Of a stretch of DNA of 64,000 nucleotides, positions 1 through 58,554 are shown one piece after another. The stretch spans positions 254,852 through 318,851 of the forward strand of contig NW_005434615.1 in NCBI RefSeq assembly GCF_000315625.1. Direction: 5' to 3'. The stretch's first letter is position 1. Each line of letters opens with the position of its first letter. Under the pieces are notes generated by a model. The model was given only the letters and a program-made list of their open reading frames with translations, was not told the origin of the DNA and searched no databases. This DNA comes from Guillardia theta CCMP2712 (taxonomy: Eukaryota; Protista; Cryptophyta). The position numbers and the translations under genes were made by a program.

Positions 1-3000
1 CTTTGTTTGCGCTCAAGTCCATCAGCAGCTCTCTGTGAACGAGACCATTGGTGTAGAAGCGCAAGGGGTGTTGCTCAAGTTCGTAGAACGTGGAGTAGCT
101 TCTTTCGACTCAGTGATTGTTCGGTCTTCCGGCAATGATTTTGTTCTTTTCTTTCGCATCTACGAGGTCTCGGAGCTGCTTCCGAACTGCTCAAATCCCA
201 GCTTTGCTAGCACGACGTCCGAGAGGTTCAGCATACTCGCTGCAGAGGTCAGTCAGCTCAAGGTCGTCGAGCAGCCTGCTGGAGCGATCGTAGCAAAGTC
301 AACGTCCAACGTCAGGGTCAGCGTTGCCTTTCAAGATAGTTTCGGAAACATCATCACCAATGCTCAAGGGTTGACTGTCTCTGCGGAGATCGGCCGGTTT
401 CAGGGTACTTGCAGCTCATACAGCACATGCCCATCGAATGGCACTTTCATTCAGAATGGTCTTTCTACAGACGGAATTGTCACGTTTGCAAGTATAAGGT
501 TGTCAACGGTTGGAACGTATCAGCTCAAATTTTTCTCCATGTCCCTTTCTGCTCTAACCACCAATTTTGAAATAGTAAGCAGCACTGCGTACATTATCGC
601 GATGTCGACCAGCCCCACCGATTCTTCATGCTCGTGGAAATCAGGCTCTACGGGAGATGTCCAATGCACTTTTGGAGGAATTTTGATTCCTCAACCGGCT
701 TTCATGATCTATGATCAGTTTGGGAATGTTGCTAACGCAGATAGCAATGTGTATGAGCTCTCTGTCGTCGGAACCGGAGCAAACAGCCCAAGCCTGATTT
801 GCGACGACTCGTTCCCTGCCAACCAGAACTGCAGGGCCTCCAGTGTGGGTGGGATCGTGAAATTCACGGACGTGCGGGTGGACCAGACTAGCTCCCAGCT
901 GCAGCTGCTCCTCTCTTTGCCGAACTGTTACGCTCTGACGAGGTGTGATGACCCCAGCAAGTTCATCAGCACAGCAGAGACAGACCCCTTCAACGTGTAC
1001 GCCATCCGTGACATCGTCCTCAACTCCAACGTGTGGGGGATTGTAGCCGGCTGCCCGTCGCAGACTGGAATCCTGCTCAGAACCTTCGGGTACCTAGAAA
1101 ACACGGGCAAGAACGTTTTCATCCCTGTCAACGGAGGGAACGTCGTCGTCTCCCTCTTCGTCTGCGGGGTACAGTACGATGACTTTCAGCTCTCATCTCC
1201 CGTGCAGGTCGTCGAGCAGTACACTGGAGCCTTCAGGCAGACGACCGAGGTCATCAATGGGAAGAGCGTCTTCAACAAGGAGATTCCTGTCGTCGGGGTG
1301 CCTTACTACGCCTACTTCTGCAGCGCCGTTCTCCCTCCTTGCACGACTTCCTCCTGGATCGTTTCTGCCGACAAGGGAAGCTGCAACATCACGAGACTGA
1401 GCGCTGCCGGCCGCTTCGTCCTCATCTGCGGAGTTGAGAGCGCACCCAGCAAGATCAGTTTGAGTGCTATGAGGTGGTTCCATCCCAAGAACGCTTCTTG
1501 GACACAGGGCACTAGCGCCAACCTCACGCTCAGCCCCATCTCCCGAGCATGCGACACTAGCAGCGGCTCCAGTGAGCTGTGGGGCCAGTCCTCAGCCAAG
1601 TTCGTTGACGGCATCGCCTCCTTCGGCAACCTCAGGATGAACATCTCCGGCCTGCACACCCTTCGCTTCCTGATCCAGTTCGACGGCTCCACGGAGACAT
1701 TCGTGCGCGAGGGTTCGCTGAACGTCTCCGTTGGCGCTGCATGGGACCTCAACGTCATCCGCCAGCCCTCGCAGATGGTCGTCGGGCAATTCTCGTCCCC
1801 CACGTTCGTCCTCCTACTCCTCAACCTCCAGGGCGACGTAGTGAGGGGGTGGAGCTGCGATGGCCTGTCGTGTTCCATCCCCGGGCCCAGCAAGCACCAC
1901 GTGCAAGTCACACTGGTTGCACTCAACGGCTCAGTCCCGGCATACAAGACGATCTCGCAGGAGACTGTGCTTGGGTTGGAGTTTTCCTTCAACTTTACCA
2001 CCCCCGGCTACTACTCCCTACTCTTCACATACTCGTCCGCGGACCTCTGCATTGCCAACTCCCAGCTGACGGCCACCAGCGATGTGTTCGTGGTCGAGGC
2101 TGGCTTACCTGCCTCCATCGTCTTCGTCCAACAGCCTACGCCGGGTTCGCTCGGGGCGGGAGATTCTTTCAGCCTGTCGTTCGCGGTCAGAGACTCGTTC
2201 AACAACACAGTCTCCACCTCCCAGGCGATCGCCGTTGCCGTTGCAGAGTCGACTGACGTCTACTTGTACAGTCGGTGCGATCAGCAGGCATTCCAGCTCA
2301 ATGGGTGCGAAGATCTGAAGATGACAAGCATCCAGATGACGAGTGTAGTCCAGAATCTGACTTTCACCATCGTCAGGCCTGGGGTGTGGAGTGTGAGCCT
2401 CGCTCTTGCCAGCGCTCTCAAGTTCAGCTCCTTCCCTGTTGTCGTCAACCAACCTGTGTTCAACGAGCAGACGAGGTTCCTTGATGTGGGGAAGACAGTC
2501 CCTTCTGCCCAGGCTGGAGACGAGCTGAGCCCGCCGGTGACGTTGGCCTTTCAAGATGTGTTTGGCAATCAGCTGAGAACTTCAAGCATGCAAGTTCAGC
2601 TCATCAACCTCGAGGCTTTTCTCGAGGGTCAACTCGTCTACGGTCCCTACAACATCTCAGGCATCGACCAGAACTTTGTCGTCCAGGGTCTCCGACTGTT
2701 TCAGTTCCAGCCTGCCCTCAAGGTCCGCTCGTCCAACTGTAGCGTTACCGTCTCCTTGTTCTTCTCTGCCACCCTCGTGCATCCCGGCGGGTCCTCAAGC
2801 GTTTCAGGGTCGGCGAGGGCCGCACTGAGGCCTCGAGACGTCTCCAACATCCTTTTCTTCTTCACGTCCTACCAGCCCATCGCCGGCGTGAATTTCTGGG
2901 ACCCACCAAGTGCCCAGCTGGCGGACGATTACGGGAACCTGATCTGCAACCATGGTGTTGCCGGCGTGTCTGTCCAGCTCTCCATCTGCAGCCTTGCCAA

Positions 3001-6000
3001 CCTCTGCGATACTCTTCTCAACAACTACCCGCTGCTGCAGGGAAGTCTCGCCGTCTTTCCCAACGTCTCGGCATCGCGTGTAGGGGAGCAGCAGCTCGTC
3101 GTGCGCTACCTTGTCAACGGGCTCGTGACCTACGAGCGACGGTCTCAGCCCTTCGAGGTCACCAGCGCTGCGGCTGTCAACGGCTCCTTCCTCCGCCAGC
3201 CGACAGCAGCGCTGGAGAGCGAGAGTATCGCGACAGAGAGTGGGAGAGCCGGTTGTGAGCCTTGCAGGGTCCACCAGGGCCTCCTCCTTGAGGTTCTTGA
3301 CAAGTTTGGGAACCTTGTCACGAGCCCAGTCGAGGTCGGCCTGTCAGTTATATACTGTCCAGGTCTGTCAATCATGGGAGATACCAAGGCCTTCTCAGTC
3401 GAGGGGATCGTTAAGTTCGAAGAGGTCGTGTTGGTCAAGTCCTCCTCATCATCATCCTCACCTTCGTCCTCGTACAGTTGCGCGATTGTTGCGACGTTTG
3501 AAGGGGGGGCGATCGAGTCCAACACATTTCCTTTCCGAGGGATACAGTCGCTGCAGTTTGTGTCCCCGCCTGTGCAGACTCTTGTGAGAAGCCGAGTGCA
3601 AGGAGGAAACGTGTCGGTCAGGATGATAGACGATGACGGGATCGTTGTCAATTCCACGTCCTTACAAGTCAACGTGACTCTGGACGACTTGGCTTGCGAC
3701 TGCTCTGCTGATTGCGCCGGGAGCTCGTTGGTGAAAAGTGTCTTCGCCTTCCCATGCATTCTTGCGCCACGCGCTTCGGGAGTTTATTCTTTGACAGCCA
3801 AGTTAGTGTCAAAGTACAAACAGCTACAAGTGACAACGTCCTTGACTGTCTTGACTGACCCTCCTTTCAAGATGACTGTCAGCCCAGTGTCAGATCATCC
3901 GGCACAGGCAAACTCAGTCCTCAGCTTCTACGTGCTTCTTACAGACGTATACGGCAACCGTGTGGTTCCCTTCCCCTCCAATCAAGTAGTCAAAATGAGC
4001 ATCGTCGCAGATCAGTCACAAATCAGCAGCACAGACCTTCAAGATGGCAGGAGGAGGATTTCAATTCCTTCCCCATCTTCATCAGGATCTTACGTGACCA
4101 GTTTCTCCCTCCTTGGCTCAAACATACAACCTGTCTCCGTCACCTTCACAGTCACTCATGCCCCCTTGCACTCTGTTCAGATCATTTCGTATTCTTCCTA
4201 TGCCCTTCAGGACCAACCACTACAGCCTGACCCCCTTCTGCAGCTGCTCGACTCGTACAACAACCCGTTCACTTCCTCAGGTTTCAACTTGACTGTGAAA
4301 GCTGCTCTCAACTTCTACTACCGGAGGCTTGATGTCGACCAGAACGGCTTTTTGCAGCTCCGCAACTTCACCTTTACCACCTCCGGCCAGACTACGATCA
4401 ACATCACGGTGATTGACACCCTGGCTGATCGCTCAGTTCAGAACTCCTCCGGTTCTATCTCAGTTCTCGACCTCGAGACCTTGCTGTCACTCCCTGTTCG
4501 ATCCAGCACTGCAGGTGATTCTTATCTTAACCTATCAGGACCTCTACAGCTCCTTCCTCTCATCGAAACCTTCAAAATCGGTCCCTCTCCTCCCTCCCTC
4601 TTGCTCAGGAGCGTTGTCATCTCCACGGGAGTGCAGGGGGGTCAGACGATCGTGAAGGAGGAGATCGCGCTGAATGGTTCTCAAGTCAACCTTCACTCCT
4701 CTCTCCATCACCTCAACACCACAGGCATGTTCTCAGCTCGACTTGTCTTCTTGGTGATCTCAGCCCACCCTCTGTCCCTCTCGGGCCCATCCTCCCTCTT
4801 CCAGGTCAGGGCTGGGCCTCCCAATGCCTTGATCATTCTGCAAGAGCCGAGTGATCAAATAGCGCTTCATGGTTGCCAAGAGAACTTCCCTTGCCCCCTC
4901 CCGTTCAACTTCTCTTTCCCTCCGCTTCCTGTACAGCCTGTCATCCGAGTGGCAGACAGGTTTGACAACGGAGTTCCTGACGTGACGGTGAATGCCTCGA
5001 TCGTCGACCTCTACAACCAGACATACGAAGGGTGCTGGTTCTCAGTCTCTACGGCGGGCCCGCAAGGCGAAGCTCGCTTCAGGAATGTAACAGCCATCCT
5101 GCCACCAGACGGCCCGTTCCCTTACTTTCAAGTTGTCTTCGCCGTCGATGGGATGCAGAAGCTGTCCAAGGTTTATTCGATCATCTCCGATTACCTCCTC
5201 ATCGTTGAGGCTCCTAGTTCTCCGCCGTCGTCAGTGGTAGCCGGACAGAGTCTGACTGTCACAGTTGGGCTCAGTGACTCCTCCTCCTCCACTCTCCACG
5301 TCGGCTCTCCGCTCTCATTGAGGTTCAGCGACGGGTTGTACACTCAGGACGAGTACAAGGCTTTCTTCACTCAAGGAGTCGCCTCGCGAACAGACGTGAA
5401 AGTCACTAGGACCTCAACCAACATGAGTCTTTTCATCCAGTACCTCGCGGTCACGAGGCAGATTGGCCCGTTCGTCGTTACCGCTGCCTCCTACGATCAC
5501 ATCACCATCCTGCAACAGCCAGCTACAGTCTTTATGGTCGACCAGCCCTCCCCGACTCCAGTACTCCTGGCACTGTACGATGCTTACAACAACCTTGTGG
5601 ACGGAACGTTTTCTATCTCAGCCAAGTCGTCACTGACCTGGACCAACTCCCTCCAATCCTGCCAGGACTTGACCTGCTCCCTCACGACCTCAGGAGGGAG
5701 GGCAAGCTTCTTAGGCTTCCGCTTCCTCACTCTATCCTCTCAGTCTTTCTTGACCTTGTCCATCGGCCAAGTGTCTGTGACAAGCAGCCCGTTCTCAGTG
5801 ATCGCCGGTCCGCCAGATGCTGTGCGAAGCTCCTTCACGGGCATTCCCAGCACGTCCTCTGCTGCCGGAGCGATCCTGTCGGGGATCGTGTGTAACGTCA
5901 AAGACTCGAGAGCCTCTAGTGTGACGGTGGTGGCGGCAGGCAGTGCTGTGAGTGGAGGGAAGGAGTACGTCGTTCTGCCGCAGGCTGCCAGCTCGGAAGA

Positions 6001-9000
6001 TGGGTTCTACGTCAACATGACTATCAAGATCCTGTCGGGGTCAGGAGCGAATCAAAAGGCGACGATCGTGTCGTACAGTGGGAAGTCGAGGACGGCTGCC
6101 GTTCTCTTTGATCGAGCTGCTGGTCCTGGTTCACAGTTTGCCATCTACCGCCCGGCTGAGTGGAGGCTGGTAAGGGTGTCGAACAACGTGGAGGCCGAAG
6201 TTGACCCTGCAGACTACTTTTGGCATGGCCCAACGCACGGGGAGATTGACAACGGACAGGTCGCGGCCTTGCCGTTGGAAATCTTTGCTAGCGGATCCTA
6301 CCGTCTCAAGGTCAAGTCGGGTGACTCTGTGTTGTCCTCAAACGCGCTTGTCATCGCCTCTGGTCCAGCGGTTTCCTTCAAACTTGCGGTGCAGTCCTCC
6401 TCTGCCAATCAGCTTTCAGTGGGGAGCCTTCCAGCCTTGCAAGTGACGGAGGTCGATCGCTATGGGAACCAAGTTCAGAGTTCCACCTCCCGCTCGTACT
6501 CGCTCGTAGCAGAAGCCCGGGTCATCGGGCCTCGGCTAGTGGAGGACTCATCTCCGATCTTGACGGGAACTACCACAAAGGCCTCTTCTTCAGGTGTCGC
6601 GACCTTCACTGACTTGCAAGTCAAGACTGTAGCTCAAGGGCTTACATTCTTGGTGTTTACCACCACCCTAGGCATGAGAGTATCTGATGACTTTGTCATC
6701 CTACCGGGCAGCCCTGTCGCCATGTCCTCTTACGCACACCTCTCCTCGTACAGACTTGACCCATCGGCGGCCACAGCATTTCCCACTCAGCCTGTGGTGG
6801 GGGTAGTGGATGTGTATCAGAACTTTGTCACGGATGTTGAGATAGCGATCGTGCTTATGAGGAATGGCCAAGTTTGTTCATCACAATCAGATTGTCAGGC
6901 TGAGCTCATGGGCAACCAGAACATAGCTGCTGATGCAGATGGCAAGTTCTACTACACGGATCTCTTCGTGGCGTCTGCTGGATACAACTACACTCTCAAC
7001 TTCTCTGTCTCACAGTATCATTACCAGGCTCTGCACGTTGAGCTCGTTTCCAACCTGTTCACCGTCTTTGCGGGCCGGGCTATGTCGTTCAAGTTCATCC
7101 CCTCGATGCCCTGCCCAGCTGCTCCCGCTCCTTGTACGCTCGCTGGACAAGCACTTCCTACTCATCGGCTGATGCTAACGGACTTCTATGGAAACAAGGT
7201 CTCTGAGAACTTCGACGGGGTGGTTGTTCAGGCGAGCCTTGAGGGAGGAGGGCAACTGAAAGGAACCGTCACTGCCGAGGTGAAGGGAGGAGAAGTCTCC
7301 TTCAGTAACCTGCGTGTCCAAGTAGCCCTTGACCCTTCCGCCTTTAACGTCATCTCCGTTGCAGACTACAACTGCGGACAAGTACAGGGAGCGTGGAAGC
7401 TTCGATTCCAAAATCTTGCAGGAGGGAGGACTGGCGATTTCCCCCTGCCCCTGGTCGTCTGCTCCGACCCCTTCGTCATCCTCCCGACTGACCCGTCCAC
7501 GTTACTCGTCTTCCCTTCCACAGTGCAAGGTGCCCTTGCGTACGCCTACCTGCCAGCCCTCATTGTGACCCTCTACGACGAGTTCGGGAACGTCGCGTAC
7601 CAGGCCGGAGGCATCGTCAAGTCGTCGTTGAAGTCATCGACCAACCCAGAGACAGCCTTGAAGAACGCAAGCTCAGTAGATATCGCCCGAGGCAAGGCGA
7701 CCATCACTGGGTTGTACATTGACAGGGAGGATTCTGCGGTCGTCATTGAGTTCTGCTATCAGATCTACTCCTCCTGCCTCATCCTTGGGAGCTCTGACAG
7801 CTTTGCGGTCAGCACGTTGCTGCCGACTACAGCTCTATGGAACCAGCAAGGGAGCATTCTTGCTGGAAAGCCTCTCTCCACCATAACTGTTTACCTTCAC
7901 TCGGTACCCTCCATTTTTTTCTCCCCCGTCGCATTCCAGATCCATCTGTGTCAGAACGGGGTCTGTACGTACGACCAGTACCTGACGGGCTTGAACACTG
8001 TTGTTTCGAACACCAGGTGGGTCAGTTTCGGCAACGTCATCATCACAAAGACCGGAGTTTTCACGCTGAGATTGGATGCAATCAACATCCCAAGCTTCAA
8101 GGTTTTCACCAGCTCATTCACAGTCCTTCCCGCAGACAGCAGCTTGTGCAACAGCCCAGGGAGCTGCTCCTTCCAGGTCGCCGAGTCGCCCGTCAATGGA
8201 ACCCTAGCAGGCTCCAACTTCTCTGTCTCTGCGGACATTTTTGACAAGTATGGGAACCTGTTGACAGCCGGCCAGGTGCAACTTACCATCGCAAGAGGCC
8301 CTGCTGGGGCTCAGCTGGTGGGAAAGACTCTCGGGCAGATCGACGCCAACGGCCGGGTCAATTTCCTTGTATCGATCACCATGAGCTGCAGCCCACTTGA
8401 CTGTCAAGGCGCGTCGGAGGAAGGGTACCAGCTCTTGTTGACCAAGGAGGCTTCCTCGGTCAAGACCGAGCTCTTCAGCGTCCTGAACCTCTTAGAGCTC
8501 AAGTCGCTCTCGTTCACCGTCCCTGTCCCAACTGCCATTGCAGGCATTGCCATGCCACTCAACCCGTTCGTGACAGTCAGAGACAAGTACGGCAACATCG
8601 TCAAGGAATACAACATCCCGCTGAAGTGGAACGTTGGCAAGCCGGTCGACATTCAGGGCTGCCTCGTATGCGCTCACTTTGCCTGGAGCTGCAGTCAGAA
8701 TCTCTCTCAGACGTGTTCAAGTGTTTCCCTACCTAGCGCTGGGCAGCTGGAGTTGGGGCCAACGGTCCTGACCAAGGCGCAATCGAGTGTAAAATTATCA
8801 GTGACGCTTTCCTTCTGGACCGGAGAGACGATCGGGACGGCGCTGTCCAACTCATTCGAAGTCATACCTGCCTTTGCCTCTCTCGTCTCTTTCGTACTTG
8901 TCCCCTCGCAGCATGTTGCTGGCCTTCCCTTCTCATACAGATTGCAAGTGGAAGATGTCTTCGGAAATCTCATCACGCGGGGCTGGGTGCACGCGACCCT

Positions 9001-26268: not shown

Positions 26269-26599
26269 ACACCACAACTTCAGGTGTCACCTTAGCATCC
26301 TGACCTTGAAACAAACACACCTGTAAATATGTTGCCATGTAAATGAATATCTTTGATCTGAATTCCTCCAATGAAACCAACTAGCAAATCCAAATGTTCA
26401 AGTCACACCATTGTCTGAAGGAGACGAATATGAGATCGTGAACGTACGATGTACCCCATATTTTACTCATATAGGAACTGCGTTCACTTATGTAAGATTG
26501 TAGTTTACTCAAGTAGTCTGATGACTCACTCTTGTATCAGCTACGTTTACTCAACTATTTCAAACCTTTATAAATTCCGTTTTATCTTGACAAGTGACT

Positions 26600-26910
26600 T
26601 GAAATTTGTTGGGGTGGGGTGTCCTCGTATAGGTTCATACACCGGTACTAGAAAAGGTAAATGAAGGGGTATTGCAAAAAACTCATGGGTGGGGTCATCT
26701 GGCCACTGGACAGTTGAAGGATAGATAATTGGATGGTAGGGTCCAGGGAATTTGGTAAATCAGGGGTGGGGTGGGTGTAAATACATGGGGTAGTGTAAAG
26801 GAAAATTGGGGTGATAGGTTACGATGAGTTGGTTTTGTGTACTCGGTAGGGGGGTGGGTTAGTTTGATGTTCAGATGGTGGGTGGACGGGTGGGCGGGAG
26901 GGTCAATCCA
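26600..26910 (+). promoter_or_regulatory. G-skewed intergenic tract with a canonical G-quadruplex motif upstream of gene B
   Basis: Many GGG(G)TGGG runs, with GGGTGGACGGGTGGGCGGGAGGG at 26880-26902. The regulatory role is inferred from position only. Confidence 0.4.
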
Positions 26911-27282
26911 ACTGACGTCTGATCCGCTCCTCGGGTAGCGCAATGCTGCGGTCACAAGAGGGATGAAGAGGAAGGGAAAGAAAGGTTGAGAGAGATTGAA
27001 AGCAATAATGCTCTATCATGAAGAAGACATGTGCTGATATAGAGAGGTTGACTTAGAACCCTTAGTTCCCAGGAGATTGCATCCTAGCAGATTTTTGAAA
27101 TCAGGTTCATGCAATAGGGAATACCTGAGTCAGTGCGGATGGAGTGAGTGAAAGCGATATTGAGATACTGACCTTTTATCATCTTGACAGTGTGAAAGAG
27201 GTCCAGCTGCATGATTGGTTTCGTATATACTGGTTGTGTCTCTTGGAATTCATGTTTTAAGCAAACCGGGAATTAAGCAGAA

Positions 27283-39200: not shown

Positions 39201-42200
39201 ATGAATACTACGAGATCCAGGTGCTCTACAAACAGTCAACGGCTAGCCAAACTGGAGACCTGCAATTCGTTTACAACTCATCTACTGGAGATCAATTCTA
39301 CCAGATCACCTCTGACAAGCTCTTTACTGCTTCTCATGTGAATGGAAGCCCCTTAACGATCACTGTCAATCCAGCTTTGACGGACTTTGATACAAGGTAT
39401 GTTGTCATTGTGTTGAGTTCGCAAGCAAATACTGACTCATTCTCATTTCTTTCTCCCCTGTTTTTATTGTACAGCATTGTCTTTGGAGAGGGCCTATCGA
39501 TTGCAACAGCCGGTGTGACTTCATCCTTCTCAATTCAAGTGAAGGACACTTTCAACAACCTCAGATTGCAGGGTGGCGACAATTTCACTGCACAGCTCAG
39601 CAAGTCGCTTGCACCAATCGTTCTATCTGCAAGCATCGTCGACAATGCAGACGGTACCTACCAAGTCTCATATCTTCCAAAGGTCGAGGGACAGTACAAC
39701 CTCGGGATTTATCTTGGCACTGACCAAAAGACTTCAAGCGTCTATGTCGAGCCGGGCGTCATCTGTGCAGCGATGAGTGTAGTGAACGGATTATCACTGA
39801 CAATTGGCACTGCTGGCTTCACCGCATCCTTCACCATTCAAGCAAAGGATTCGTTTGACAACGTCAGAACCCTTGGAGTTGACAACTTCATCGTGAGGTT
39901 GAATGGCCCAGCAACCGAAGAACACAACGTCCTTGCAAGGTACCTCGGTGCTTCTCCCAACACGAATTTGGGCCGTTGGACAGTGGCCTACCGTACAACA
40001 AAATCTGGAAACTTCGGTAAGTGTTTCATAAAAGTATGCTGCCTTGATTGATCCATTGAACAGGCATGTCCATCTTTGCGGCTTCGAACAAGTAAGTGAA
40101 CATCAGTTTGTTCTAGAAAGGATTGACCATCTGACGCGTATTTGTTTACAGTGGATTGAATACGACATACTACAGAGATCCTGAACTCAACTTTGCTGTC
40201 TACAATGAAATTGTTCCCACTGTGGACTTCGATGTCGGCGACAGCACTCCTAATGAGTACGTTGGAATTGTCGATGGATTCAGCATTCAATGGCAGGGAT
40301 TTGTCAAGCCCCAGTACGCTGAAGATCACACTTTCACTGCCATGGTAGCGGAGAAGGATGAGAGAATCAAGGTTTGGCTCGATGATCAGTGGATCATTGA
40401 CCAATGGTCTTCGTTGGACACCTTGACGCCGTCGGGCACTCTCTGGTTGGTTGGAGATCTCCTTTATGACCTCAAAGTCCAGTACAAGGAGATTTCTGGT
40501 CAGTCATCGGCTGCTATCATGTGGCAATCTCCTTCAATGAGTCAGCTCATTATTCCCAGCTCAAGATTGTTCGCGAGCGCTGATCATATCGCTGGAAGTC
40601 CATTCTCAACGTCTGTGTTCCCAGCCAGAACTTCTGGAGTTTTGTCCACTGCCATGGGACAAGGCCTTTCCCTTGCTACCGCTGGTGTTCCTGCTTCCTT
40701 CACCATCCAGGCACTGGACCACCTTGGCAACATCAAAACAACTTCCGACGATGTGTTTGTGGTCAGGGCCAGATTCAATGGTATCCACAACGACGTCAAC
40801 AAGAAAAATAGGATTGGCATTGTAACAAACATTGCTCCTGGATTGTACTCTGCATCATACACAGCGACTTGGAAGAGAAATGCACTCTCCGATGACGGCT
40901 GGCAGATTGACACGTACTCTGCAAGCAAGTTGGCACAATATCAAGACATCGGCTTCAGCGGAATTCGCAAGAAGTTTCATGACGTGTTGGTCTCCCAAGC
41001 ACTTCCGGGTGGTTTGATGGCGACCTACTATGACATGATCTCTTCAGACTTCGGTGCTGGACCTTGGGATGGCTTCATCAAGGAACCATGGCTAGATCCT
41101 GTCAGCTCCAAGATCAGCCCAGTTGTAGATGTCGTCGGAAGCTCAAGTGCCGTTGACAGCTGGTGCGTGACCGACGCCACCAACTTTGGAGTCCGATTTG
41201 CTGGCTTCTTCAGTCCTGCAACTGCTCAAAGATACACTTTTCGAACCATCATCGGAAACACTGAGACAGAAAGAGTGAGGCTATGGGTTGACAACTTCCT
41301 AGTTATCGATCAATGGCTCTCCTTGGCCACTGCAGTGGATACCTCAACAGGCTGGGCTGTCTATGAAGGAACGTTTCAATTTGACAGCGTCAATGACTTC
41401 CACGACATTAGGATTGACTACAAGCACGTCAACACTACGTCGTATGATTTGACCAAGATTTCTCTGGAATACATCTTTGCTGAACAGATACTGACCGATT
41501 GTCCGTCAACTGTCGGAATCGGTATAGTCATGCTTGACTAGCTGTTTGATCACATACTAACCTTTTTTTCAGATGCTTGCTCACAGTGCGTTGGAAGATC
41601 TTGTCAGTACAATGGTACTGCTGTTTTGATTCCAAGTGCTCGCTTGTTCCAATCCCACGATTTGAACTTCAACATATTCGAAGCTGGAGGACTAACGGCA
41701 ACGTACTATGATTCCTCTGATACGGTTGGAGCACTGCTTGATGGAGGCGTGTACGACGTTCTCGTCACCGGAACTGCCGTGAATCCATACGATACAACTT
41801 GCACAGCAACTTGCAACACTCCTTGCACTGGCAGCGGATTGACTTGTATTTGCAATGTGACCAGTGGAACGGTATCGATGATTACCATCACTGATCAGGG
41901 CAGTGGCTACTCAGCTCAGTATCCACCTACCATCACGTGTGATGGCGGCTCTGGACAGAGCTTCTATCCCAGAATCTCGTTTGCAGGAGGAATCGTAGGC
42001 GGCAACCTTGTGCCCAAGAAGGCTGTGCAGGAACCAGCCGTGGACTGGTCCGGAAGCTCCTTCACTGACAGGTGAATACTTTATCTAGTGTAGTTGATAC
42101 TGACTTGCTAGCAGACCATATCCATCTTCTGTCACAGATGGACGATTCTCAGTCCGCTGGATGGGATTTGTGAGACCAAGCAGAATGGATGAATACACAT

Positions 42201-45200
42201 TCTACGTTTCCCTCCCCTCTCTGGATCCCTCCACCAGCAATGCTCAGAGCTCTGAGAGGGTCAGGTTGTGGGTAGACAACAGTCTGCTTGTTGATCAGTG
42301 GGTATCCCTTGGAGCCGGACCATCATACAGTGGCACTGCTACCTTCCCCATGCCCAACGAATACTACAACATCCAAGTAGACTACAAGATCACATCCACT
42401 CAGAATCTTCGCGGAATCAGACTTGAGTACGAGAACGTGGCTAGTCGCCTTCCGCTCTTGTACGGCGAGCCTGCTGTGAACTCAACCGATGTTGTCACAA
42501 GAGGTAGTATAGATGCTGGATTCGTCGGATCATCCTGACGCACTTTCGCAACAGGTGTCATCCGTTCGGATCGTTTGTTCTCCACTCGTGTCTCTTCTCA
42601 AGTTCAGAGGGACGACTATCATATTTGGGACACAGACTACTATGATTCCAGCAAGGTATGGAATGTAGATTGGAAAGTTCCAAGAATCTCCCAGTGGAGC
42701 AAGACCAACGGGTGAGAATTACTCCGTTATCTACAGCCGTTCGATTGACTTTCTTGTTCAGATGCCCAACGACACCTGGTTCGTTGAGGTACGACGAATG
42801 CAGAGGACAAGGAACAAGAACGAATGAAATCCTTCGAGTCGATGTCAAACCAGCTGAGATCAGTGCTGATAATTGCAACGTGCTAGGAGATTCTCTCACG
42901 ATTGCCACTGCTGGTGTTACAAGAACTTTCACCTTGACTGCACGTGATGCCTACGACAACCAAAGGGACGCCACAGATGATGCCTTCATCGCCCGTGCAA
43001 CGCTTGTCGATTCAACCAGCCAGGCATTCCATGGAACTTTCGTGCACCAAGATTGGCAAACACTGCATGATGTCAATGGTGAGCTGAATAATCCTGTGTG
43101 GGATCAGAACGGAAAGTATGAGGTGACCTACGTTGTAACAAGATCTGGAACCTTCCAGAACGTGATTCAGGAATTGGACACTGGCGGCAGAGGTATGTGG
43201 GGCACTTACTTTGTTGGGTCGCTCTTGGAACAAGGCAAACTGTTGGGAACTGAATTGGAAACTACCTTGGACTTTGCATGGGGCTCTAACAATCCCCTCA
43301 ATGCTTCTTCACCATACCAGGGCTGCTGGAGCGCTCGTTGGGTTGGATTTGTGAATGGCAACTATTCTGAAATCTTCACCTTCACCGTAGTCACTGATGG
43401 AGGAGTGCGACTGAAGTTTGATGACGTCACCATCATCGATCAGTGGAACTCTACAGCAGCAAATGAGTTCTCAGCTACCGTCCAGATGGTTCAGGGAGTC
43501 TTCTACGACCTCGAAGTCGAGTATGTTACAGGAGCAGTTGGAGACAAGAATTTGCAGTTGTACTGGCAATCGAACTCTCAAGTCAAAGACATCGTGTCAA
43601 ACTCCAACCTACGGGTAGAATCTAATGTTGTCGGACTTCCTTCCAACTCTGGAGGTCCCAACGGAGGATTCAACACGTTGTTCGTCCATCCAACTGTGGT
43701 TTGCGCAACGACTTCATCCGTCGCAGGCGCTGGCCTCACCATTGCCACAGCAGGAGTGCAGGCCTCGTTCTCTGTAAGTCGAATTTGATCAAATGTAACT
43801 TGCTGATATCACGAACAGGTTTGGAGCAAAGATATGTATGGCAACCTTAGGGACGATGCCAACGATATCCTCGTTGCCCGTATGTTCCCTGACGACTCTG
43901 ACACAGAGTCTGGCATCACCTTTGCCGGCACTGGTCTCCAGGCCACTTACTATGATGCACTTGGTTTTGCTCTTCCAACGCAGGCAACGGCTACTGGTGC
44001 AACGATCGGCAACGGAGTCGCAAGCACCCCAGGCTATTTCAGCTTCTCTTCGTCTGCAACTCCCTTCGCAACCTCCCAGTATGGATGGAGTGTGCGTTGG
44101 GAAGGAACGATCCGCCCATCTTACTCAGAGCTCTATGACTTCACTGTGAATGTGTCAAGTGCTGACCGAGTGAAGTTGTGGATTGATCAGTCTTTGATCA
44201 TTGATCAGTGGAGTTCCTTGTCATCTACTGCTCCAATCGGATCTTACCAGAACGATGGTCTGGTTCACAGCATCAAGATTGACTACCGCAAGCTCTCTAC
44301 TTCACCCTACGTGTTTGCCCTGCTTTGGAACGCAACTTCAGTTCCACTAGAGGAGGTCTCACCAGTGGTGCTCTATCCTTGCAAGTATCCAAGCACTTTG
44401 AATGCTCATGGAACTGCTTGCCAAGTCGACAGCAAAATACAGACCGACACGAACATGGCACAGAACCTCTCATATGGCGTCACAACCTTCAGCGACTTTG
44501 GATTCTACAGGCTCCAGCCGGTTCCAAACTCTTCGACAGCAACAGGTAAATTCTCCATGCATAGCTCGTTGTTCTTCTGACTCCTTTCCGCAAAGCGTTC
44601 GGACCCTTCTCGGGCAATCGTCGTCCATTTGGATACGTACAGACCCGGGCAGGATCGCACACGGTTGCGATCGATGAGGTTGCCTACAACTTCGATTACA
44701 GGAGCGGCACCTTCCGTAGTGTTCCAGGCCTGGGCCTCATGGCAACGTTTTATGACACTCCTAGCTTCGGAACTGCGCGCAACAGCTTCGACTGCGGCAT
44801 GGGCCAAACGAACTGTCTTACAACAAACATTGACTGGTCAACAGCTGGTTTGGATGGACCATACTCGTGAGTCATGTGATTCTCCTTCTCCTTCTTCTGA
44901 ATCACTTTGCAGTCTTGCCTCGGACGGAAGCTTCAGTGCCAGATGGACTGGCATGGTGAGGATTGATCCGAATGTGTCGGACGGAGTCTTCGCTATGGAG
45001 CTCAACGAGAACGGAAAGGAAGAGCGAGTGAAGCTTTGGATCGACAACAGCCTTCTCATCGATCAGTGGGTCTCTCTCAGTGCAACAGCCCTTGAGACCC
45101 AGAAGAATGCTTACCTCCCTGGAGAAATGTACAGCATTAAGGTTGAGTACAAGAAGGTCCTTGCTTCTTCTGGGTCCGGAGCGTTGCTCAGATTGAAATG

Positions 45201-48200
45201 GAACAATGCTACCGTCCCCCGAGACAGCTTGTACCCGGCTCATGTAGTTTCAGGAACATACAAGAGGGTAAGAGTGAATCCAGCCCTTGCCTTCGCGCCT
45301 TCGTGCGAGGTACATGGAGTTGGATTGACACTTGCCACTGCGGGTCAAGAAGCGTCCTTCTTGATCCAGAGCAAGGATGCGTACAACAATGTCCGTGGTA
45401 TTGGCGGCGATCTGTTCGGTAAGTAACTTCTGTGAAAATCATTTTATTGTTGTGATGGCTTCCACGACTATGAAATTTCTTGGTGACACGTTGCGTTTTC
45501 AGTCGTCCGGGCCTTCTCCGATGGCTGCCAATCCTTGAATCCCGGGCGTGACACTCTCTGCAATGGCTACACTGGATCAAGGTCCCCTGACAGCTCGACA
45601 TACCAGATGGATGCTGCTTGCAGTGACGCGGCAGAATGTGCTCCCTACCCTCCTCAGGTCGGCTCCAACGGCCCGAACCTGCAGGGCGACCTCATCCGTG
45701 GAGGAACATATATCAATGAGATCGTCGGAATCTCTCTTGTTTCAGATTCCACCGGGCGGGTCATTCCCGTCGGTTCATCCACCACTCAGATTATGCTCCA
45801 GCCTGGACATTTTGCAACTGCCGATGTCTACGTAGGGGCAGCATTGACCATCAGCGGCTGTGACGCTGCCAAGTCTGTGAACCTGACGATCGTAGCGTAC
45901 GATTCGAATCGTATTGCCACACTGGTAAATGATGGATCGAATCTTTGTAGATGTTGCTGACCTCTTGTGTGTTTGCAGAGCGAGGCTCTTCCTGCAGTGC
46001 CTGACACGACGTGCGTCTATGCAATTAACGCCTCCAAGACTGTTGCGTACCTGGACAGTGCTGCCAGCGCTGTGGACGATGCTTACACCGATTACAACAT
46101 CATGTTCACCTCAGGTCCTTGCATCGACCGTTGGACGAGGATCCTCGGGTATGCTGGAGGACAGCTGGATGTTGCAAAGGTTGCCTACCTTCAGGCCAAC
46201 AACACTCCTTGGATCCAAGGATCGATCCAGTCGGTTGTGAGCACCAGCCAGCTCGTGTTGGACACTTCGTCGCCGACGAACGATGACTGGAGAGGAATGT
46301 GGTTGACAATCAACGATGCGACGGGAATGCAGCAGCACAAGACCAAGATCATCTCGTCTGTTGGGGCCACCATCACGCTTGCAACCAGCATCCCCTCCAC
46401 GATCAGTTCGGAGGATTTGGTTTCTTTCATCATCCACGGATGGGAAGATGGTGGTCGCCCCTGTGACGCCAGCAGCGGAAGCGTGAAGCTCATCCCCAAG
46501 GTGTGCAACACAGTCATCGACCAGGGAACAGTGCAAGCTGTGGGATACTCGGTCGTTGCTGCCACCATTGACGACCAGGGCTCTGGCTACTTTGCTGGAG
46601 ACTTGGTTGTCAATTGCAGCGGTGGATGCTCAGGATGGGGTTTGATGGGCAAATGCATCAATTCCAGCACTGGAACAGGTCTTAAAATCGTCATCACCAA
46701 CAGCGGAAGGTGAAGCCCCTTCTGTCCTCCCGCAGTGCGCTTGTTCTGACGTTGATGCCTGCAGGTCATACTCACCTTCCAGTCCTCCTCAAGTCTCCTG
46801 CCCTTCGAACAGTCCTTCCTCCCCAATGGTCGTCACGGTATCCTTGGCTGTGAGGGAGATTCAACTTGCTAGCTCGGCCTCCATAACCGCTGGGGCATAC
46901 GTGGGATACACTTTGTCTGCTGATGGGTCCGGGGAGAAGAGGACTATTGCGATGTACTTCGCTAATCGCACTGCTGTCGTCTCTCAGTCCTTCACCGACT
47001 CTCCGCTCGCCTCTCGCAACTTGTACACAGTGTCCGGCTGCCTCGGGTCGCAGGGCCCTCTCTACTGCCCGCAGTGCCCTCGGATCATCCGTGCGGATGT
47101 TGTCGACAACGGAGACTCCACATACAGTGCCGTCTTCACTGGAACGAGGAAAGGACAGTACACTGTCGTCACTTCACTTGTCAGCGCTGGAGGGCTTACG
47201 AGCACCTACTACAATGACCTTGACAACACTGTCTCCTTGAACTTCGGTGAGGGAAATCCTCAATCATCTAGAGTAGACAACATCTTGGATTGGTCGTCTG
47301 CAGACGGAAGCCTCCCTACGTCGTTGAGCGGAAGCAAGGTACCCCTCCTTGCTCCTCCTCTTCTGGCCTTGTGTACTGACTTCTTTCTTTCTCCCAGTTT
47401 GGAGTTCGCTGGGTCGGATTTGTGCGGCCATCGCAAGCACAGCAGTACACGTTCTCGATGAATCTGTTCAGCGCTGGCAACCAAGAGCGCGTGAAGCTTT
47501 GGGTTGACAACAGCATCATCATCCAACAGTGGACTTCCCTGTCCAGCACCTCCCCCAGCGGAACTATCGGATTCGGAAAAGGAAATGGATACTATGACAT
47601 CATGGCCTTGTACAAGTGCACAACAGGCTGTAGCACCGCAGGCTACACTCTCAAGTGGCAGTACCAGACCACCACATCGACCAGCTCCGCCACCACTTTG
47701 GAAACCATCACGTCTGACAGGCTGTTCCAGAGGCTGGACGTCCCCAACGCTGCTTCAGGGCTCCGCATCCAGCCTGCCGTCACCTGCGCCAGCGAGAGCG
47801 TTGCCTTCGCGCAAGGCCTCACCCTGGCGACTGCAGGCGTTGGCTCGAGCTTCACGATCAGAAGCAAGGATGCGTATGAGAACGTGCGGGAGGACACCAG
47901 CGCTTCCTTCACTGTGAGCCTTCATGGGTCGGGCGGCACCCCAGTGTACGCAGGAGCTGTCATTGCCAATGCTCCTTCCACTTTGGCCACCTACACTGGA
48001 TCCTTCACTCTGCAGAACGCCAAGGGCTACGAAGTGTTCATCAAGCATGGCAATGACAACGTCAAGGGTTCGCCCTTCACGCTCACTGTCAAGCCAGCCA
48101 CTACCTGTGGAACCACGAGCACGATCAGAGGCACTGGACTCACCATGTCCTCGATCTCTCCCACCAAGTCTGCCTTCACCATCCAGGCTCGCGATCAGTT

Positions 48201-49160
48201 TGGCAACGCCAAGACCACAGGGCCGAACCAGCAGGAGTTCATCGTGCGTGTGGTGAGAACCTCGGGCATCAACAAGCAGGGAACCAACGGGCTTCCTCCC
48301 ATGTACGACTCCACCGCCATCAACGTCCAGGGCACTCTACATGCCGACTACAACACGCCGACACTGGACGGCAGCCTTTCCGGCTACTACCAAGTTCCGC
48401 CAACTCCTGACCCCGCGAGTTTGATCCACTACCTCTACGCCTCATGGACTTCGGTCGGCGGCGTCGCAGCGACTTACTACACCTACACAGAGGTCGGGGA
48501 GGGCGGGACGTGGAGCTCGCCGTTGGACACTCTAGTGTCAGGGGCGGCAGCGAATAAGCGGATGGGCAAGATCGGAACGAACGCAGACAACACGTCGGCA
48601 GTGAACGAAGCGAGTGCCGGGCTATGGGGAGGCGCAGGGCTGCAGGCAACCGACAGCGCGTTCGCTATCCGATGGAATGGAATGTACATGAACACCAACC
48701 AGACCACCTACTTTAAGTGGGACAGCGGGTTGCCGTCTGACCGCGTTCGCCTGTGGATCGACAACGTTCTTATCATCGACCAGTGGAGCTCTCTTTCTCA
48801 GGTGACCCTCCTCCCTCCCCTCCTCCTCCCCACTCTCATCTCACCCTCTTTTGCTATTCCATCCTCTAACGGCTCCCGCAGAATTCCACGAATGCCTCCT
48901 ACGTCTTTGACAGCATCGGCCAGCTCTACGACATCCAGCTTGACTGGAAGCGAGCAGCGGGCTCTCCGGCCACCTTCGTGAACTTGCAGGACTCCGAGGA
49001 CGAGGTCACGTACACGGACATTCCCAGCAGTCGCCTCTATGTCCAGGTAGACCTCCTCCTCCTCCTCCTCCTCCTCCTCCTCCTCCTCCTCCTTGCCTCT
49101 GACCTTTTCATGCAGGAATTCATATCGGGGTCGCCTTATTATGTTTCTGTCAGCTGCTAA
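27283..49160 (+). CDS. Gene B: giant secreted filamin-repeat/PA14-domain protein, roughly 6,500-6,900 aa, multi-exon
   Basis: Signal peptide MQTKSRLLAASTKVLVVYIVIVLSSYASA|E; first intron 27521-27569. About 18 repeats of S...G.GL..ATAG....FTI.ARD..N.R..GGD.F.V....D..DG.Y.V.Y...G.Y...GSPF (filamin/ABP280-type). About 17 domains of GGL.ATYY...F.VRW.G..P..Y.F...RVKLW.DN..IIDQW...Y.I..EYK...L.W...I.S..L (PA14). It ends EFISGSPYYVSVSC* with no TM helix in the spliced form. Confidence 0.88.
49052..49093 (+). repeat. (CCT)n microsatellite in the last intron of gene B
   Basis: Directly visible inside intron 49047-49115. Confidence 0.9.
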
Positions 49161-49375
49161 GACTCTCCAGTCCCCCTCTTTTCTCTTTCCTCTTTGTTAT
49201 TTTCATCTAGTGAGTGAGTAAACTGAATGCAAATAAATGCTCTCCTCCCTCCTTCCAGTCCTCTCCCCTCCCTCCCTCCTTCCAGTCCGCTGCTCCGTCT
49301 TCCTCTCCGTCCTCGTCCTCGTCCTCGTCCTCGTCCGTTCCGACTGCTTCTGAGCTATCAGAGCTCTCCTTGCTG

Positions 49376-52019
<2,644 letters not shown>

Positions 52020-52199
52020 TGATCATAGACCCGCAGCTGCAGCACTTGCTTCACGATCTCCGCATGCTCGCATCGCGTCACTTGTCCCTGCCGCTTGCTC
52101 GTCCTCGCCGAGACAAGTCTCGAGCATCGACCCGACTTCTCTCCTCTTCCTCCATCTTCCCCTCTATGATCCCTTGACCCTCATTTTCCGTCCATACTC

Positions 52200-52640
52200 G
52201 GTCTGAGGCGGGTTCGGCGTGTAAGGTGCCCGGCCGGGCCGGGGCCCCGGCGTCACGGACCGGGCCGGGCCGGGCCCCCGTCGGGGGGCGGGCCGGGGAG
52301 ACTGGGGGAGGGGTCACAAGGGCAGTTGTGGCATTCCGGACCGCCCCCGTTACTAATAGTTGCCACAATGCGGCCGCAGGGCCGGCCGTAGCGCCCGACG
52401 GACTGTTGCCGGGTGCGGACTTGGAAGCCTTGAAAGACTTATTCGCCCGGCCTACTCGGAGTTCTGTTCGACCCCGGCTGCGGCTTCAAGGCTTGCTTGC
52501 TGCGGCTGCCCGGCCACCGGGTACTAAGACCGACTTTGAACGCCCGGGCCCTGTCGGAGTCCGACTCCCAGTGGCACTGGGACGGTCTGGCCCGGCGCAC
52601 TGCGGCTGAGGCCGGCGACAGAGTCGAGGCGGGCTTGCAA
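52200..52640. promoter_or_regulatory. GC-rich island between the divergent RecQ and TPR genes (putative bidirectional promoter)
   Basis: Dense CCGG/GGCC/CCCGGG words and short palindromes such as CCCGGCCGGG; head-to-head position. Confidence 0.45.
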
Positions 52641-52647
52641 CGTGACT

Positions 52648-54119: not shown

Positions 54120-54193
54120 GTGGCTATGCGTTTCCTTACCCTTGACGAATGAAACTCCGTTAACACTGAGGACTACGAGCTTCTGCTTCCACC

Positions 54194-55778: not shown

Positions 55779-55923
55779 CCTGCTCCTGCTCCTGCCCCTG
55801 CCCCTGCCCCTGCCCCTGCCCCTGCTCCCTGCCCCTGCCCCTGCCCCTGCCCCTGCCCCTGCCCCTGCCCCTGCCCCTGCCCCTGCCCCTGCCCCTGCCC
55901 CTGCCCCTGCCCCTGCCCCTGCC

Positions 55924-55978
<55 letters not shown>
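55779..55978. repeat. Compound hexamer repeat (CCTGCC)n(CCTGCT)n
   Basis: Directly visible and apparently intergenic. Confidence 0.95.

Positions 55979-58513: not shown

Positions 58514-58554
<41 letters not shown>

What the first reader, a model, noticed from the sequence alone, without database searches (positions are those of the whole stretch)
1..49160. Tandem pair of giant surface genes (membrane anchor plus secreted multi-lectin fibre) sharing a module: candidate undescribed cell-surface system
Seen: two co-oriented genes about 1 kb apart encode a ~8,000+ aa single-pass protein and a ~6,700 aa secreted, anchorless protein. Both are Ig-repeat rods decorated by inserted domains, and both contain the same ~60 aa module (5966-6148 in A, about 14 copies in B). 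Established: PA14, C-type lectin, EAR and REJ/GPS are adhesion, glycan-binding or mechanosensing modules. Inference: A could tether or sense, and B could form an extracellular filament such as a periplast coat, flagellar hair, or prey or virus trap.
Basis: partly seen in the sequence, partly recalled or inferred. Interest (0 to 1): 0.8.

Follow-up and report, generated by a model that had tools for sequence, protein, structure and literature searches.

The report
Two adjacent giant algal surface-protein genes
Two very large neighbouring genes of a cryptophyte-like marine protist encode a polycystin-like membrane receptor and a secreted sugar-binding rod that share a small undescribed domain. 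The two related contigs that could be checked do not keep them side by side, so nothing yet shows that they work as a pair.

Summary
The window is eukaryotic DNA, not human, with 45-70 nt introns.

- **Gene A** (base 2 to stop 26232-26234, cut at its 5' end) encodes about 8,000 aa or more. It has at least 36 divergent invasin/filamin-type Ig repeats, one C-type lectin domain, an EAR region and a REJ region. A GAIN fold follows (Foldseek E 2e-10 to adhesion-GPCR GAIN domains), then a Cys motif, EGF, one TM helix and a tail.
- **Gene B** (ATG 27283 to stop 49158-49160) encodes about 6,700 aa. It has a signal peptide, 17 PA14 domains, about 20 filamin repeats and no TM. The poly-Leu near its end lies in an intron.
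- **Shared module:** a roughly 55 aa module occurs 13 times in B and once in A. A profile built from B copies alone finds the A copy at 18.9 bits, against at most 4 bits in shuffles. It has no Pfam family and no PDB fold match.

The interpretation as a dedicated system is not supported. A B orthologue (L001) has no A within 9 kb upstream. An A orthologue (L009) has no B within about 9 kb downstream. A belongs to a small family that includes the cryptophyte Hanusia phi. B belongs to a broader one.

Best reading: two independent giant adhesion or glycan-binding proteins, each a new variant of a known kind, plus one new small domain.

The parts
2..26234 (+). Gene A, 5'-truncated by the window. 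It encodes a giant single-pass type-I membrane protein of about 8,000 aa or more.
   Evidence: ORF chain and introns. Stop TGA at 26232-26234. Collinear homologues in L008, L009, L010 and L012.
2..12304 (+). Gene A exon 1: one 4,101-codon open frame holding 22 detectable Ig-like rod repeats of 100-125 aa. No Pfam hit reaches threshold.
   Evidence: Weak Big_1 match (E 0.016). The only database relative is a bacterial Big_1/Invasin_D3 protein, P0001.
5984..6145 (+). The single copy in gene A of the shared module of about 55 aa, nested inside one rod repeat.
   Evidence: Profile from B copies only: 18.9 bits against at most 4 bits in shuffles. Full profile: 50.7 bits. Conserved at the homologous position in orthologue L012.
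13675..18696 (+). Gene A exon with 11 rod repeats and a Cys-rich stretch at its start.
17533..17826 (+). C-type lectin-like domain. It has EPH..WYS where sugar-binding C-type lectins have EPN..WND.
   Evidence: Pfam Lectin_C 54.7 bits. PDB relatives DEC-205, PLA2R and mannose receptor at E 1e-29. The motif was read from the translation.
20707..21423 (+). EAR/EPTP repeat region, probably a beta-propeller.
   Evidence: Pfam EPTP 57.6 bits, with several matched stretches.
21916..23646 (+). REJ-like region spanning two exons.
   Evidence: The window scores REJ 22.8-23.9 bits, below the cut-off of 25. Collinear homologues score 78.8 bits (P0076) and 71.3 bits (Hanusia phi P0069).
23761..25092 (+). 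GAIN domain: a helical subdomain followed by a beta subdomain. It ends in a GPS-like strand pair that reads K-L-G where cleaved GPS sites read H-L-T/S.
   Evidence: AlphaFold model with pLDDT 82.6 and pTM 0.82. Foldseek hits BAI3, BAI2, latrophilin, GPR110 and CELSR1 GAIN domains at E 2e-10 to 3e-7. Alignment A2. Pfam GPS only 14.2 bits.
25125..25268 (+). Small exon with the CGVCGGDNS..CSGCDG Cys motif. It is the best-conserved piece of the family.
   Evidence: 59-71% identity to L008, L009 and L010. Present after the GPS in P0072, P0073, P0075 and P0079.
25309..25527 (+). EGF-like exon.
   Evidence: Pfam EGF_2 32.8 bits. Conserved in homologues.
25637..25711 (+). The only transmembrane helix of gene A.
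   Evidence: It aligns with the single TM of P0072, P0073 and P0075. P0076 also has a single TM near its C-terminus.
25749..26234 (+). Cytoplasmic tail exon, with a conserved acidic ..EV.ADLC.. motif, plus the stop codon.
26235..27282 (.). Intergenic spacer of 1,048 nt between A and B.
   Evidence: No tRNA gene.
27283..49160 (+). Gene B: a secreted protein of about 6,700 aa with no anchor.
   Evidence: ORF chain. Collinear orthologues in L001, L002 and L006. Stop at 49158-49160.
27283..27369 (+). Signal peptide of gene B (29 aa).
   Evidence: Translation. It is the only hydrophobic segment of B. The first exon is 59% identical in L001.
27686..48819 (+). Span holding 17 PA14 domains (18 profile hits, one domain split by an intron) interleaved with about 20 filamin-type Ig repeats.
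   Evidence: Pfam. Own profiles. The best solved relative is the Clostridium RsgI3 PA14 pair 6qe7 at E 1.4e-51.
31332..47038 (+). Span holding 13 copies of the shared module, singly or in runs, inside or between filamin repeats.
   Evidence: No Pfam family. Model with pLDDT 84, a 5-stranded small beta barrel. No PDB fold match with E below 1.
49047..49115 (+). Last intron of gene B. It contains the (CTC)13 microsatellite that reads as poly-Leu in frame.

Best explanation
A and B are two separate giant cell-surface or extracellular proteins of a cryptophyte-like marine protist. They are built from the same toolkit: Ig-type rod repeats with inserted binding domains, including one previously unnamed SH3-like beta-barrel module. 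They most likely act independently rather than as a dedicated pair.

**Gene A**
- It is a single-pass relative of the polycystin-1 / sea-urchin REJ ectodomain type.
- It has a rod of Ig repeats perhaps more than 150 nm long (inferred from repeat number), which carries a C-type lectin-like domain and an EAR propeller.
- The REJ and GAIN domains sit next to the membrane.
- Its GPS position reads K-L-G instead of H-L-T/S. It is therefore probably not self-cleaved, and would work as an intact adhesion or mechanosensing receptor. This step is inferred.

**Gene B**
- It is secreted and carries 17 PA14 domains of the bacterial polysaccharide-binding type on a filamin rod.
- It most likely acts as a multivalent glycan-binding matrix or adhesive protein. 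This step is inferred.

**Shown:** gene structures, domains, topology, the shared module and the lack of conserved linkage.

**Inferred:** ligands, localisation and function.
For: - **Gene structures and topology:**
- **Domains:**
- **GAIN fold:**
- **Family architecture:** homologues P0072, P0073, P0075, P0079 and P0076 show GPS, Cys motif, EGF, one TM and a tail in the same order.
- **A family is small:** 15 hits among 1.84 billion representatives, including Hanusia phi.
- **B family is broader:** 43 hits in one length band, including Rhodomonas and Baffinella.
- **No conserved A-B adjacency:** L001, L009 and L005.
- **Module in other architectures:** present in P0031 and P0035, absent from P0076.
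Against: - Two genes of more than 20 kb each lie 1 kb apart on the same strand and share a rare module. That is a suggestive arrangement.
- The module in A is conserved at the same position in a 23-30% identical orthologue (L012), so it matters to A.
- B has no anchor of its own and needs something to hold it at the cell surface.
- The synteny test rests on only two metagenomic contigs from unknown organisms, with 9 kb of flank each.
Confidence: 0.6

Rival explanations
1. Anchor-plus-fibre system. A would be the membrane tether or sensor, and B the extracellular filament it holds. The arrangement would resemble a flagellar hair, surface coat or capture fibre, analogous to the Chlamydomonas mastigoneme, in which a PKD2-like anchor protein holds the MST1 filament.
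For: - A and B are adjacent, co-oriented and 1,048 nt apart.
- They share a module, which is conserved in the A orthologue L012.
- B is secreted and has no anchor.
- There is a precedent for a polycystin-type anchor with Ig-like and C-type lectin domains holding a secreted filament (PMC11015965; PMC7265326).
Against: - Linkage is not kept in L001 or L009, nor at the Baffinella locus.
- The module is absent from the distant A homologue P0076 and occurs in unrelated architectures.
- No polymerisation element was recognised in B.
- There are no expression or localisation data.
Confidence: 0.15
2. Artefact: the giant frames result from a mis-assembly or collapsed repeats, or are decaying pseudogenes rather than real genes.
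For: The window has a 100-N gap and many microsatellites, but all of these lie downstream of 49 kb.
Against: - One frame runs 4,101 codons and another 2,069 codons without a stop.
- There are no DNA-level tandem repeats inside A or B.
- Introns have consistent GT..AG, branch-point-like CTGAC or ACTAAC, and lengths of 45-70 nt.
- Orthologues are collinear exon by exon in independent assemblies.
- A 96% identical copy exists in another metagenome (L007).
Confidence: 0.03
3. A and B are one transcription unit or one gene.
For: They are on the same strand and the spacer is short.
Against: - A ends with a TM helix, a tail and a stop codon, exactly as its homologues do.
- B begins with its own signal peptide.
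- The B orthologue in L001 starts at the same exon, behind unrelated genes.
Confidence: 0.02

Closest known systems
Polycystin-1 / sea-urchin REJ proteins (PKD1, PKDREJ, suREJ1)
   Same: - Large ectodomain made of Ig-type repeats plus a C-type lectin domain.
- REJ region followed by a GAIN/GPS domain next to the membrane.
- suREJ1 is also single-pass and carries EGF and C-type lectin domains (from my own knowledge).
   Different: - One TM only, with no PLAT domain, no 11-TM region and no channel-like part.
- The rod repeats are invasin/filamin-like, not PKD repeats.
- An EAR region is present.
- A Cys motif and EGF lie between the GPS and the TM.
- The GPS reads K-L-G, not H-L-T, so no self-cleavage is expected (PMC4810088).
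- REJ is below the Pfam cut-off in the window itself.
ADGRV1 (VLGR1) and other adhesion GPCRs
   Same: - Giant repeat ectodomain.
- EAR/EPTP domain.
- GAIN fold. The best structural matches are adhesion-GPCR GAIN domains.
   Different: - No 7-TM domain.
- The repeats are not Calx-beta.
- The cleavage triad is missing.
Chlamydomonas mastigoneme (MST1 filament, MST3 anchor, PKD2 and SIP)
   Same: It is a known case of a polycystin-type membrane protein, with Ig-like and C-type lectin domains, that tethers a secreted hair-like filament (PMC11015965).
   Different: - No sequence relationship was shown or tested.
- MST1 polymerises through a Cys-rich domain and poly-proline helices, and I recognised neither in B.
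- MST3 has a PKD2-like multi-pass domain, whereas A has one TM.
PA14 carbohydrate-binding proteins (Clostridium RsgI3 PA14 pair, fungal Flo/Epa adhesins, anthrax protective antigen N-domain)
   Same: The PA14 domains of B score up to 115-160 bits in Pfam. They match the RsgI3 PA14 pair at E 1.4e-51. GLEYA gives weak hits.
   Different: - There are 17 copies on a filamin rod in a secreted eukaryotic protein of about 6,700 aa.
- Sugar-binding residues were not examined.
GEX2 / FUS1 gamete adhesion proteins
   Same: - They use filamin- or invasin-type Ig repeats.
- Ig_GEX2_N hits in B score up to 38.5 bits.
- The A-repeat profile gives a weak hit to FUS1p, 9qs0, at E 0.048.
   Different: - GEX2 and FUS1 are much smaller single-pass proteins without PA14.
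- The hits overlap Filamin hits and the FUS1 match is marginal.

Membership tests
Polycystin-1 / REJ family | REJ domain (Pfam PF02010) at or above its curated cut-off | tested here: inconclusive
   The window scores 22.8-23.9 bits against a cut-off of 25. Collinear homologues pass clearly: P0076 at 78.8 bits and P0069 at 71.3 bits.
Polycystin-1 / REJ family | GAIN domain with a GPS next to the membrane | tested here: met
   Model with pLDDT 82.6. Foldseek matches GAIN domains at E 2e-10 with probability 1.00. The GPS is not immediately next to the TM: a Cys motif and EGF exons intervene.
Polycystin-1 / REJ family | H-L-T/S self-cleavage triad in the GPS | tested here: not met
   The window has K-L-G at model residues 556-558. 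Some homologues keep H-L-S (P0070, P0075, P0077). The role of the triad is described in PMC4810088.
Polycystin-1 / REJ family | PLAT domain and 11-TM channel-like region (PKD1 and PKDREJ proper) | tested here: not met
   Only one hydrophobic helix, at 25637-25711. No PLAT or PKD_channel hit was found.
Adhesion GPCR (for example ADGRV1) | 7-TM domain after the GAIN domain | tested here: not met
   Single TM. Homologues are also single-pass.
Adhesion GPCR (for example ADGRV1) | EAR/EPTP repeats | tested here: met
   EPTP 57.6 bits against a cut-off of 21, with several matched stretches.
C-type lectin (sugar-binding subgroup) | CTLD fold plus the EPN/QPD and WND calcium and sugar motifs | tested here: inconclusive
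   Lectin_C scores 54.7 bits and PDB relatives reach E 1e-29. The motifs read EPH and WYS, so classical sugar binding is doubtful.
PA14 domain proteins | PA14 domain above the Pfam cut-off | tested here: met
   Thirteen B pieces score above the cut-off of 24 bits, up to 160.9 bits. Own profile finds 17 domains. RsgI3 PA14 matches at E 1.4e-51.
PA14 domain proteins | Demonstrated glycan binding, or conserved calcium and sugar-binding residues | not tested
   Binding-site residues were not compared. This needs structure-based alignment and glycan arrays.
Filamin/ABP280 repeat proteins | Filamin repeat above the Pfam cut-off | tested here: met
   B pieces score up to 57.3 bits against a cut-off of 26.9. 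The rod repeats of A match only weakly: hhalign probability 46% and Big_1 E 0.016.
Mastigoneme-type anchor plus fibre system | Physical attachment of the secreted protein to the membrane protein, and a filament-forming element | not testable with these tools
   The only computational proxy is conserved linkage. It was not met in L001, L009 or L005.
GEX2 / FUS1 | Single-pass protein with filamin- or invasin-type Ig repeats as the only extracellular domains | tested here: not met
   B has no TM and is dominated by PA14. A carries lectin, EAR, REJ and GAIN domains. Similarity is limited to the Ig repeats.

The most novel reading that the evidence does not exclude
A and B would be the two parts of an undescribed surface apparatus of cryptophyte-like algae. 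A would be an uncleaved GAIN/REJ receptor, and B a glycan-binding fibre of about 6,700 aa that A holds or senses. The contact could run through the new SH3-like module nested in the Ig repeats of both, giving a functional parallel to the polycystin-anchored mastigoneme. Loss of adjacency in other lineages would then be secondary.
Probability: 0.12. Interest if true: 0.75.

Novelty: new variant of a known kind. Interest (0 to 1): 0.42.

Why it matters
GAIN/REJ receptors and PA14 adhesins are well studied in animals, fungi and bacteria. Their giant counterparts in cryptophyte-like plankton have not been described in the literature I could search.

- **Gene A:** it shows the polycystin-type ectodomain logic (Ig rod, C-type lectin, REJ, GAIN) in a single-pass form that probably cannot self-cleave, far outside animals. 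This is useful for asking what the GAIN domain does without cleavage or a channel.
- **Gene B:** it defines a widespread family of very large secreted proteins with many PA14 domains in marine eukaryotes. These could matter for cell-surface coats, aggregation or prey capture.
- **Module:** the shared module of about 55 aa is a candidate new domain family. It has no Pfam entry and no PDB fold match, and it is nested in Ig repeats.

If the anchor-plus-fibre idea were true, it would be a second, independent example of a polycystin-like protein holding an extracellular filament. Present evidence does not favour that reading.

Tried and rejected
**Searches that failed or gave nothing**
- Exact look-up of an ORF-level product of A (13744-18696): not on record.
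- Word search with exon 1 of A: one weak bacterial hit only.
- Word search with the 1,674 aa exon of A: only bacterial Big-type proteins. No close A orthologue was found this way. The exhaustive search with the GAIN exon was needed to find any.
- jackhmmer from a single A repeat did not spread. A motif-seeded profile worked instead.
- phmmer of three C-terminal exons of A against PDB sequences: no hits. The GAIN relationship is visible only at the fold level.
- Pfam scans of module copies: nothing.
- Foldseek of the module model: only generic KOW/SH3-like barrels at E of about 1.
Whether the module occurs in prokaryotes was therefore not tested.
- P0076 was too long for a context look-up.
- The last 7.9 kb of the L012 contig could not be fetched.

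**Ideas rejected**
- An alternative genetic code as the explanation for in-frame stops between ORFs. The stops are TGA, TAA and TAG, and all lie inside short GT..AG introns.
- A C-terminal poly-Leu anchor for B. It is intronic.

**Not established**
- The organism was not identified. The named relatives are cryptophytes: Hanusia, Rhodomonas and Baffinella.
- The contig is not human, so the operators' restriction on human contigs did not apply.
Full report
**What the window is**

The window is eukaryotic nuclear DNA and is not human. Long + strand reading frames from base 2 to 49160 are interrupted by very short introns of 45-70 nt. These introns have GTATG- or GTAAG-type donors, CTGAC- or ACTAAC-like branch sites and CAG acceptors. 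The in-frame stops between frames are TGA, TAA and TAG, and all lie inside such introns. No alternative genetic code is involved. There are no DNA-level tandem repeats inside either gene, so the protein repeats are old and divergent rather than an assembly artefact. Downstream of 49.3 kb lie ordinary genes, microsatellites and a 100-N gap: a RecQ-like helicase on the minus strand, a WD40 protein and a hexapeptide-repeat protein.

**Gene A (base 2 to stop 26232-26234)**

The frame is already open at base 2, so the 5' end is outside the window. The pieces sum to about 8,000 aa.

*Rod repeats*
- Exon 1 is a single frame of 4,101 codons with no Pfam hit at E 0.01.
- A profile seeded on the recurring D-x-[FY]-G-N motif finds 36 repeats of 100-125 aa: 22 in exon 1, 11 in the exon 13675-18696, 2 in 18732-19490 and 1 in 19720-21912.
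- These are invasin/filamin-type Ig repeats, on weak but consistent evidence:
  - Big_1 at E 0.016.
  - The only database relatives are bacterial Big_1/Invasin_D3 proteins and myxobacterial S8 peptidases.
  - A PDB profile search gives FUS1p at E 0.048.
  - hhalign against the filamin repeats of B gives probability 46% over the shared AG...D-x-YGN strand.
- The fold of these repeats was not modelled.

*Domains that follow the rod*
- A C-type lectin-like domain: 54.7 bits, with PDB relatives at E 1e-29. It reads EPH..WYS in place of EPN..WND.
- An EAR/EPTP region at 57.6 bits.
- A REJ-like region that scores just below the cut-off in the window. It scores 71-79 bits in collinear homologues.
- A region of 565 aa that was modelled with 15 homologues (pLDDT 82.6, pTM 0.82). 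The model shows a beta sandwich, a helical bundle and a beta subdomain. Foldseek matches it to the GAIN domains of BAI3, BAI2, latrophilin, GPR110, CELSR1, GPR126 and CD97, at E 2e-10 to 7e-5 with probability 1.00.

*GPS site*

The last two strands read ..FVRCRS-KKL-GIFAVSE... The cleavage triad H-L-T/S is therefore K-L-G here, while some homologues keep H-L-S. The Thr/Ser nucleophile is essential for cleavage (PMC4810088). Self-cleavage of this protein is therefore unlikely. This is an inference.

*C-terminal end*

After the GPS come a small exon with a CGVCGGDNS..CSGCDG motif, an EGF exon, one TM helix (25637-25711) and a tail of about 160 aa. Un-spliced or intronless homologues P0072, P0073, P0075, P0079 and P0076 show exactly this order, which validates the exon chain.

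**Gene B (ATG 27283 to stop 49158-49160)**

- It starts with a 29 aa signal peptide and a filamin repeat.
- Own profiles and Pfam give 17 PA14 domains and about 20 filamin repeats.
- The PA14 domains are closest to the polysaccharide-sensing PA14 pair of Clostridium RsgI3, 6qe7, at E 1.4e-51.
- A hydropathy scan finds no TM segment other than the signal peptide.
- The poly-Leu just before the end is a (CTC)13 microsatellite inside a 69 nt intron (49047-49115). Spliced, the protein ends ..IPSSRLYVQ-EFISGSPYYVSVSC. This matches the end of the L001 orthologue..IPTDRLFTTEDISGSPYAVTVST.
- B is therefore secreted and has no TM anchor or hydrophobic C-terminal signal.

**The shared module**

- A profile built only from B copies finds exactly one place in A: aa 1995-2037 of exon 1, window 5984-6112, at 18.9 bits and i-E 1e-5. 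Two hundred shuffles of exon 1 reach at most 4 bits.
- With copies from homologues added, B has 13 copies between 31332 and 47038, and A has one at 50.7 bits.
- The consensus is roughly L..AS....Y.G..I.I..G.G.G..R.I..Y....R.ATV...F...P...S.Y.I.
- None of 58 copies hits a Pfam family.
- A model from the 58-copy alignment is confident (pLDDT 84) and shows a five-stranded small beta barrel. Its best PDB matches are generic KOW/SH3-like barrels at E of about 1, so there is no significant match.
- In A the module sits inside a rod repeat. The repeat's first strands precede it and its last strands follow it. In B, filamin half-repeats flank modules in the same way.
- The module is kept at the homologous position in the A orthologue on L012, which is 23-30% identical overall (28.3 bits). 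It is not detected in the more distant A homologue P0076.
- It also occurs in cryptophyte B-like proteins from Rhodomonas and Baffinella, and in proteins that combine FG-GAP, MAM and PA14.

**Relatives and linkage**

*B family.* B has many relatives. There are 43 hits in the 1,138-3,620 aa band, with the best at 50-61% identity from marine metagenomes including Tara Oceans. L001, L002 and L006 carry collinear orthologues.

*A family.* A is rarer. The exhaustive search with its GAIN exon found 15 proteins among 1.84 billion representatives:
- a 96% identical copy (P0067),
- a 36% orthologue (P0068, on L009),
- Hanusia phi A0A7S0HJ60 (P0069),
- a 7,667 aa single-ORF homologue (P0076) with the same Lectin_C, EPTP, REJ and EGF order.

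*Synteny.*
- In L001 the 9 kb upstream of the B orthologue holds unrelated genes on both strands, one of them with a CFAP99 domain, and shows no similarity to A.
- In L009 the roughly 9 kb downstream of the A orthologue holds small ORFs and a PH-domain gene on the other strand, and shows no similarity to B.
- The Baffinella B-like locus, with 10 kb on each side, has no A.
- L002, L006, L010 and L012 have too little flank to decide.
The sample is small, and the contigs come from unidentified organisms.

**Interpretation**

The most economical reading is two independent giant surface or extracellular proteins.
- A is a single-pass GAIN/REJ receptor that is probably not cleaved. It is of the polycystin-1/suREJ1 type with an ADGRV1-like EAR insertion.
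- B is a secreted, multivalent PA14 glycan binder on a filamin rod.
- Both use a new nested beta-barrel module.

The anchor-plus-fibre idea has a real precedent in the Chlamydomonas mastigoneme. There a polycystin-type protein with Ig-like and C-type lectin domains tethers the secreted MST1 filament (PMC11015965; PMC7265326). It stays possible, at about 0.12-0.15, because B needs something to retain it and the adjacency is striking. Nothing computed here links the two beyond proximity and one shared domain.

I found no paper describing such proteins in cryptophytes.

**Verdict**

Novelty is a new variant of known kinds plus a candidate new small domain. Interest is moderate.

Noticed in passing
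window 27686-48819 (PA14 domains of gene B): The closest solved relative of the PA14 domains is the bacterial Clostridium RsgI3 PA14 pair at E 1.4e-51. Anthrax protective antigen reaches only about 1e-5. This suggests a bacterial-type polysaccharide-binding PA14, possibly acquired from bacteria.
   Followed up: partly
window 2-19490 (rod repeats of gene A): The only sequence relatives of the rod repeats outside the A family are bacterial: a Big_1/Invasin_D3 giant protein, myxobacterial S8 peptidases, and proteins on the contigs L003 (bacterial by its neighbouring genes) and L004 (origin not checked). The origin of the repeat type is unclear. It could be ancient shared ancestry or transfer.
   Followed up: partly
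window 13800-13990: A Cys-rich stretch at the start of the 13675-18696 exon contains a ..PWCYV.. motif. It has no Pfam hit and its nature is unknown.
   Followed up: no
window 17533-17826: The C-type lectin-like domain has EPH and WYS where sugar-binding C-type lectins have EPN/QPD and WND. It may not bind sugars in the classical way.
   Followed up: partly
window 49376-50761 (- strand): A RecQ-like helicase exon (Helicase_C, RecQ_Zn_bind) converges on the 3' end of gene B. It contains a perfect (GAT)50 microsatellite at 50194-50344.
   Followed up: no
window 49052-58901: This stretch has a dense set of tri- and hexanucleotide microsatellites and a 100-N assembly gap at 57715-57814, flanked by TCC repeats. 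Genes A and B contain no DNA-level tandem repeat apart from the (CTC) run in the last intron of B.
   Followed up: no
window 59765-60376 (-) and 62763-63344 (-): Two ORFs match a CDC20/Fizzy-type WD40 domain (weakly) and a hexapeptide-repeat / dynactin-p25-like protein. They look like ordinary housekeeping neighbours.
   Followed up: no
window 1-8000 and 46000-54000, against 10000-44000: G+C is about 0.55-0.60 at both ends of the A-B region and 0.47-0.50 in between. The cause was not examined.
   Followed up: no
alignment A2 (P0070, P0075, P0077 against window 25060-25092): Within the A family some members keep the H-L-S cleavage triad in the GPS. The window protein, its 96% relative and several others have K/R/W-L-G. 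The family seems to include both cleavable and non-cleavable GAIN domains.
   Followed up: partly
L010 and the P0076 cluster: A distant A homologue is encoded as a single uninterrupted frame of 7,667 codons on contigs of 26-28 kb. It was seen in at least seven assemblies. It has 23 rod repeats and no copy of the shared module.
   Followed up: partly
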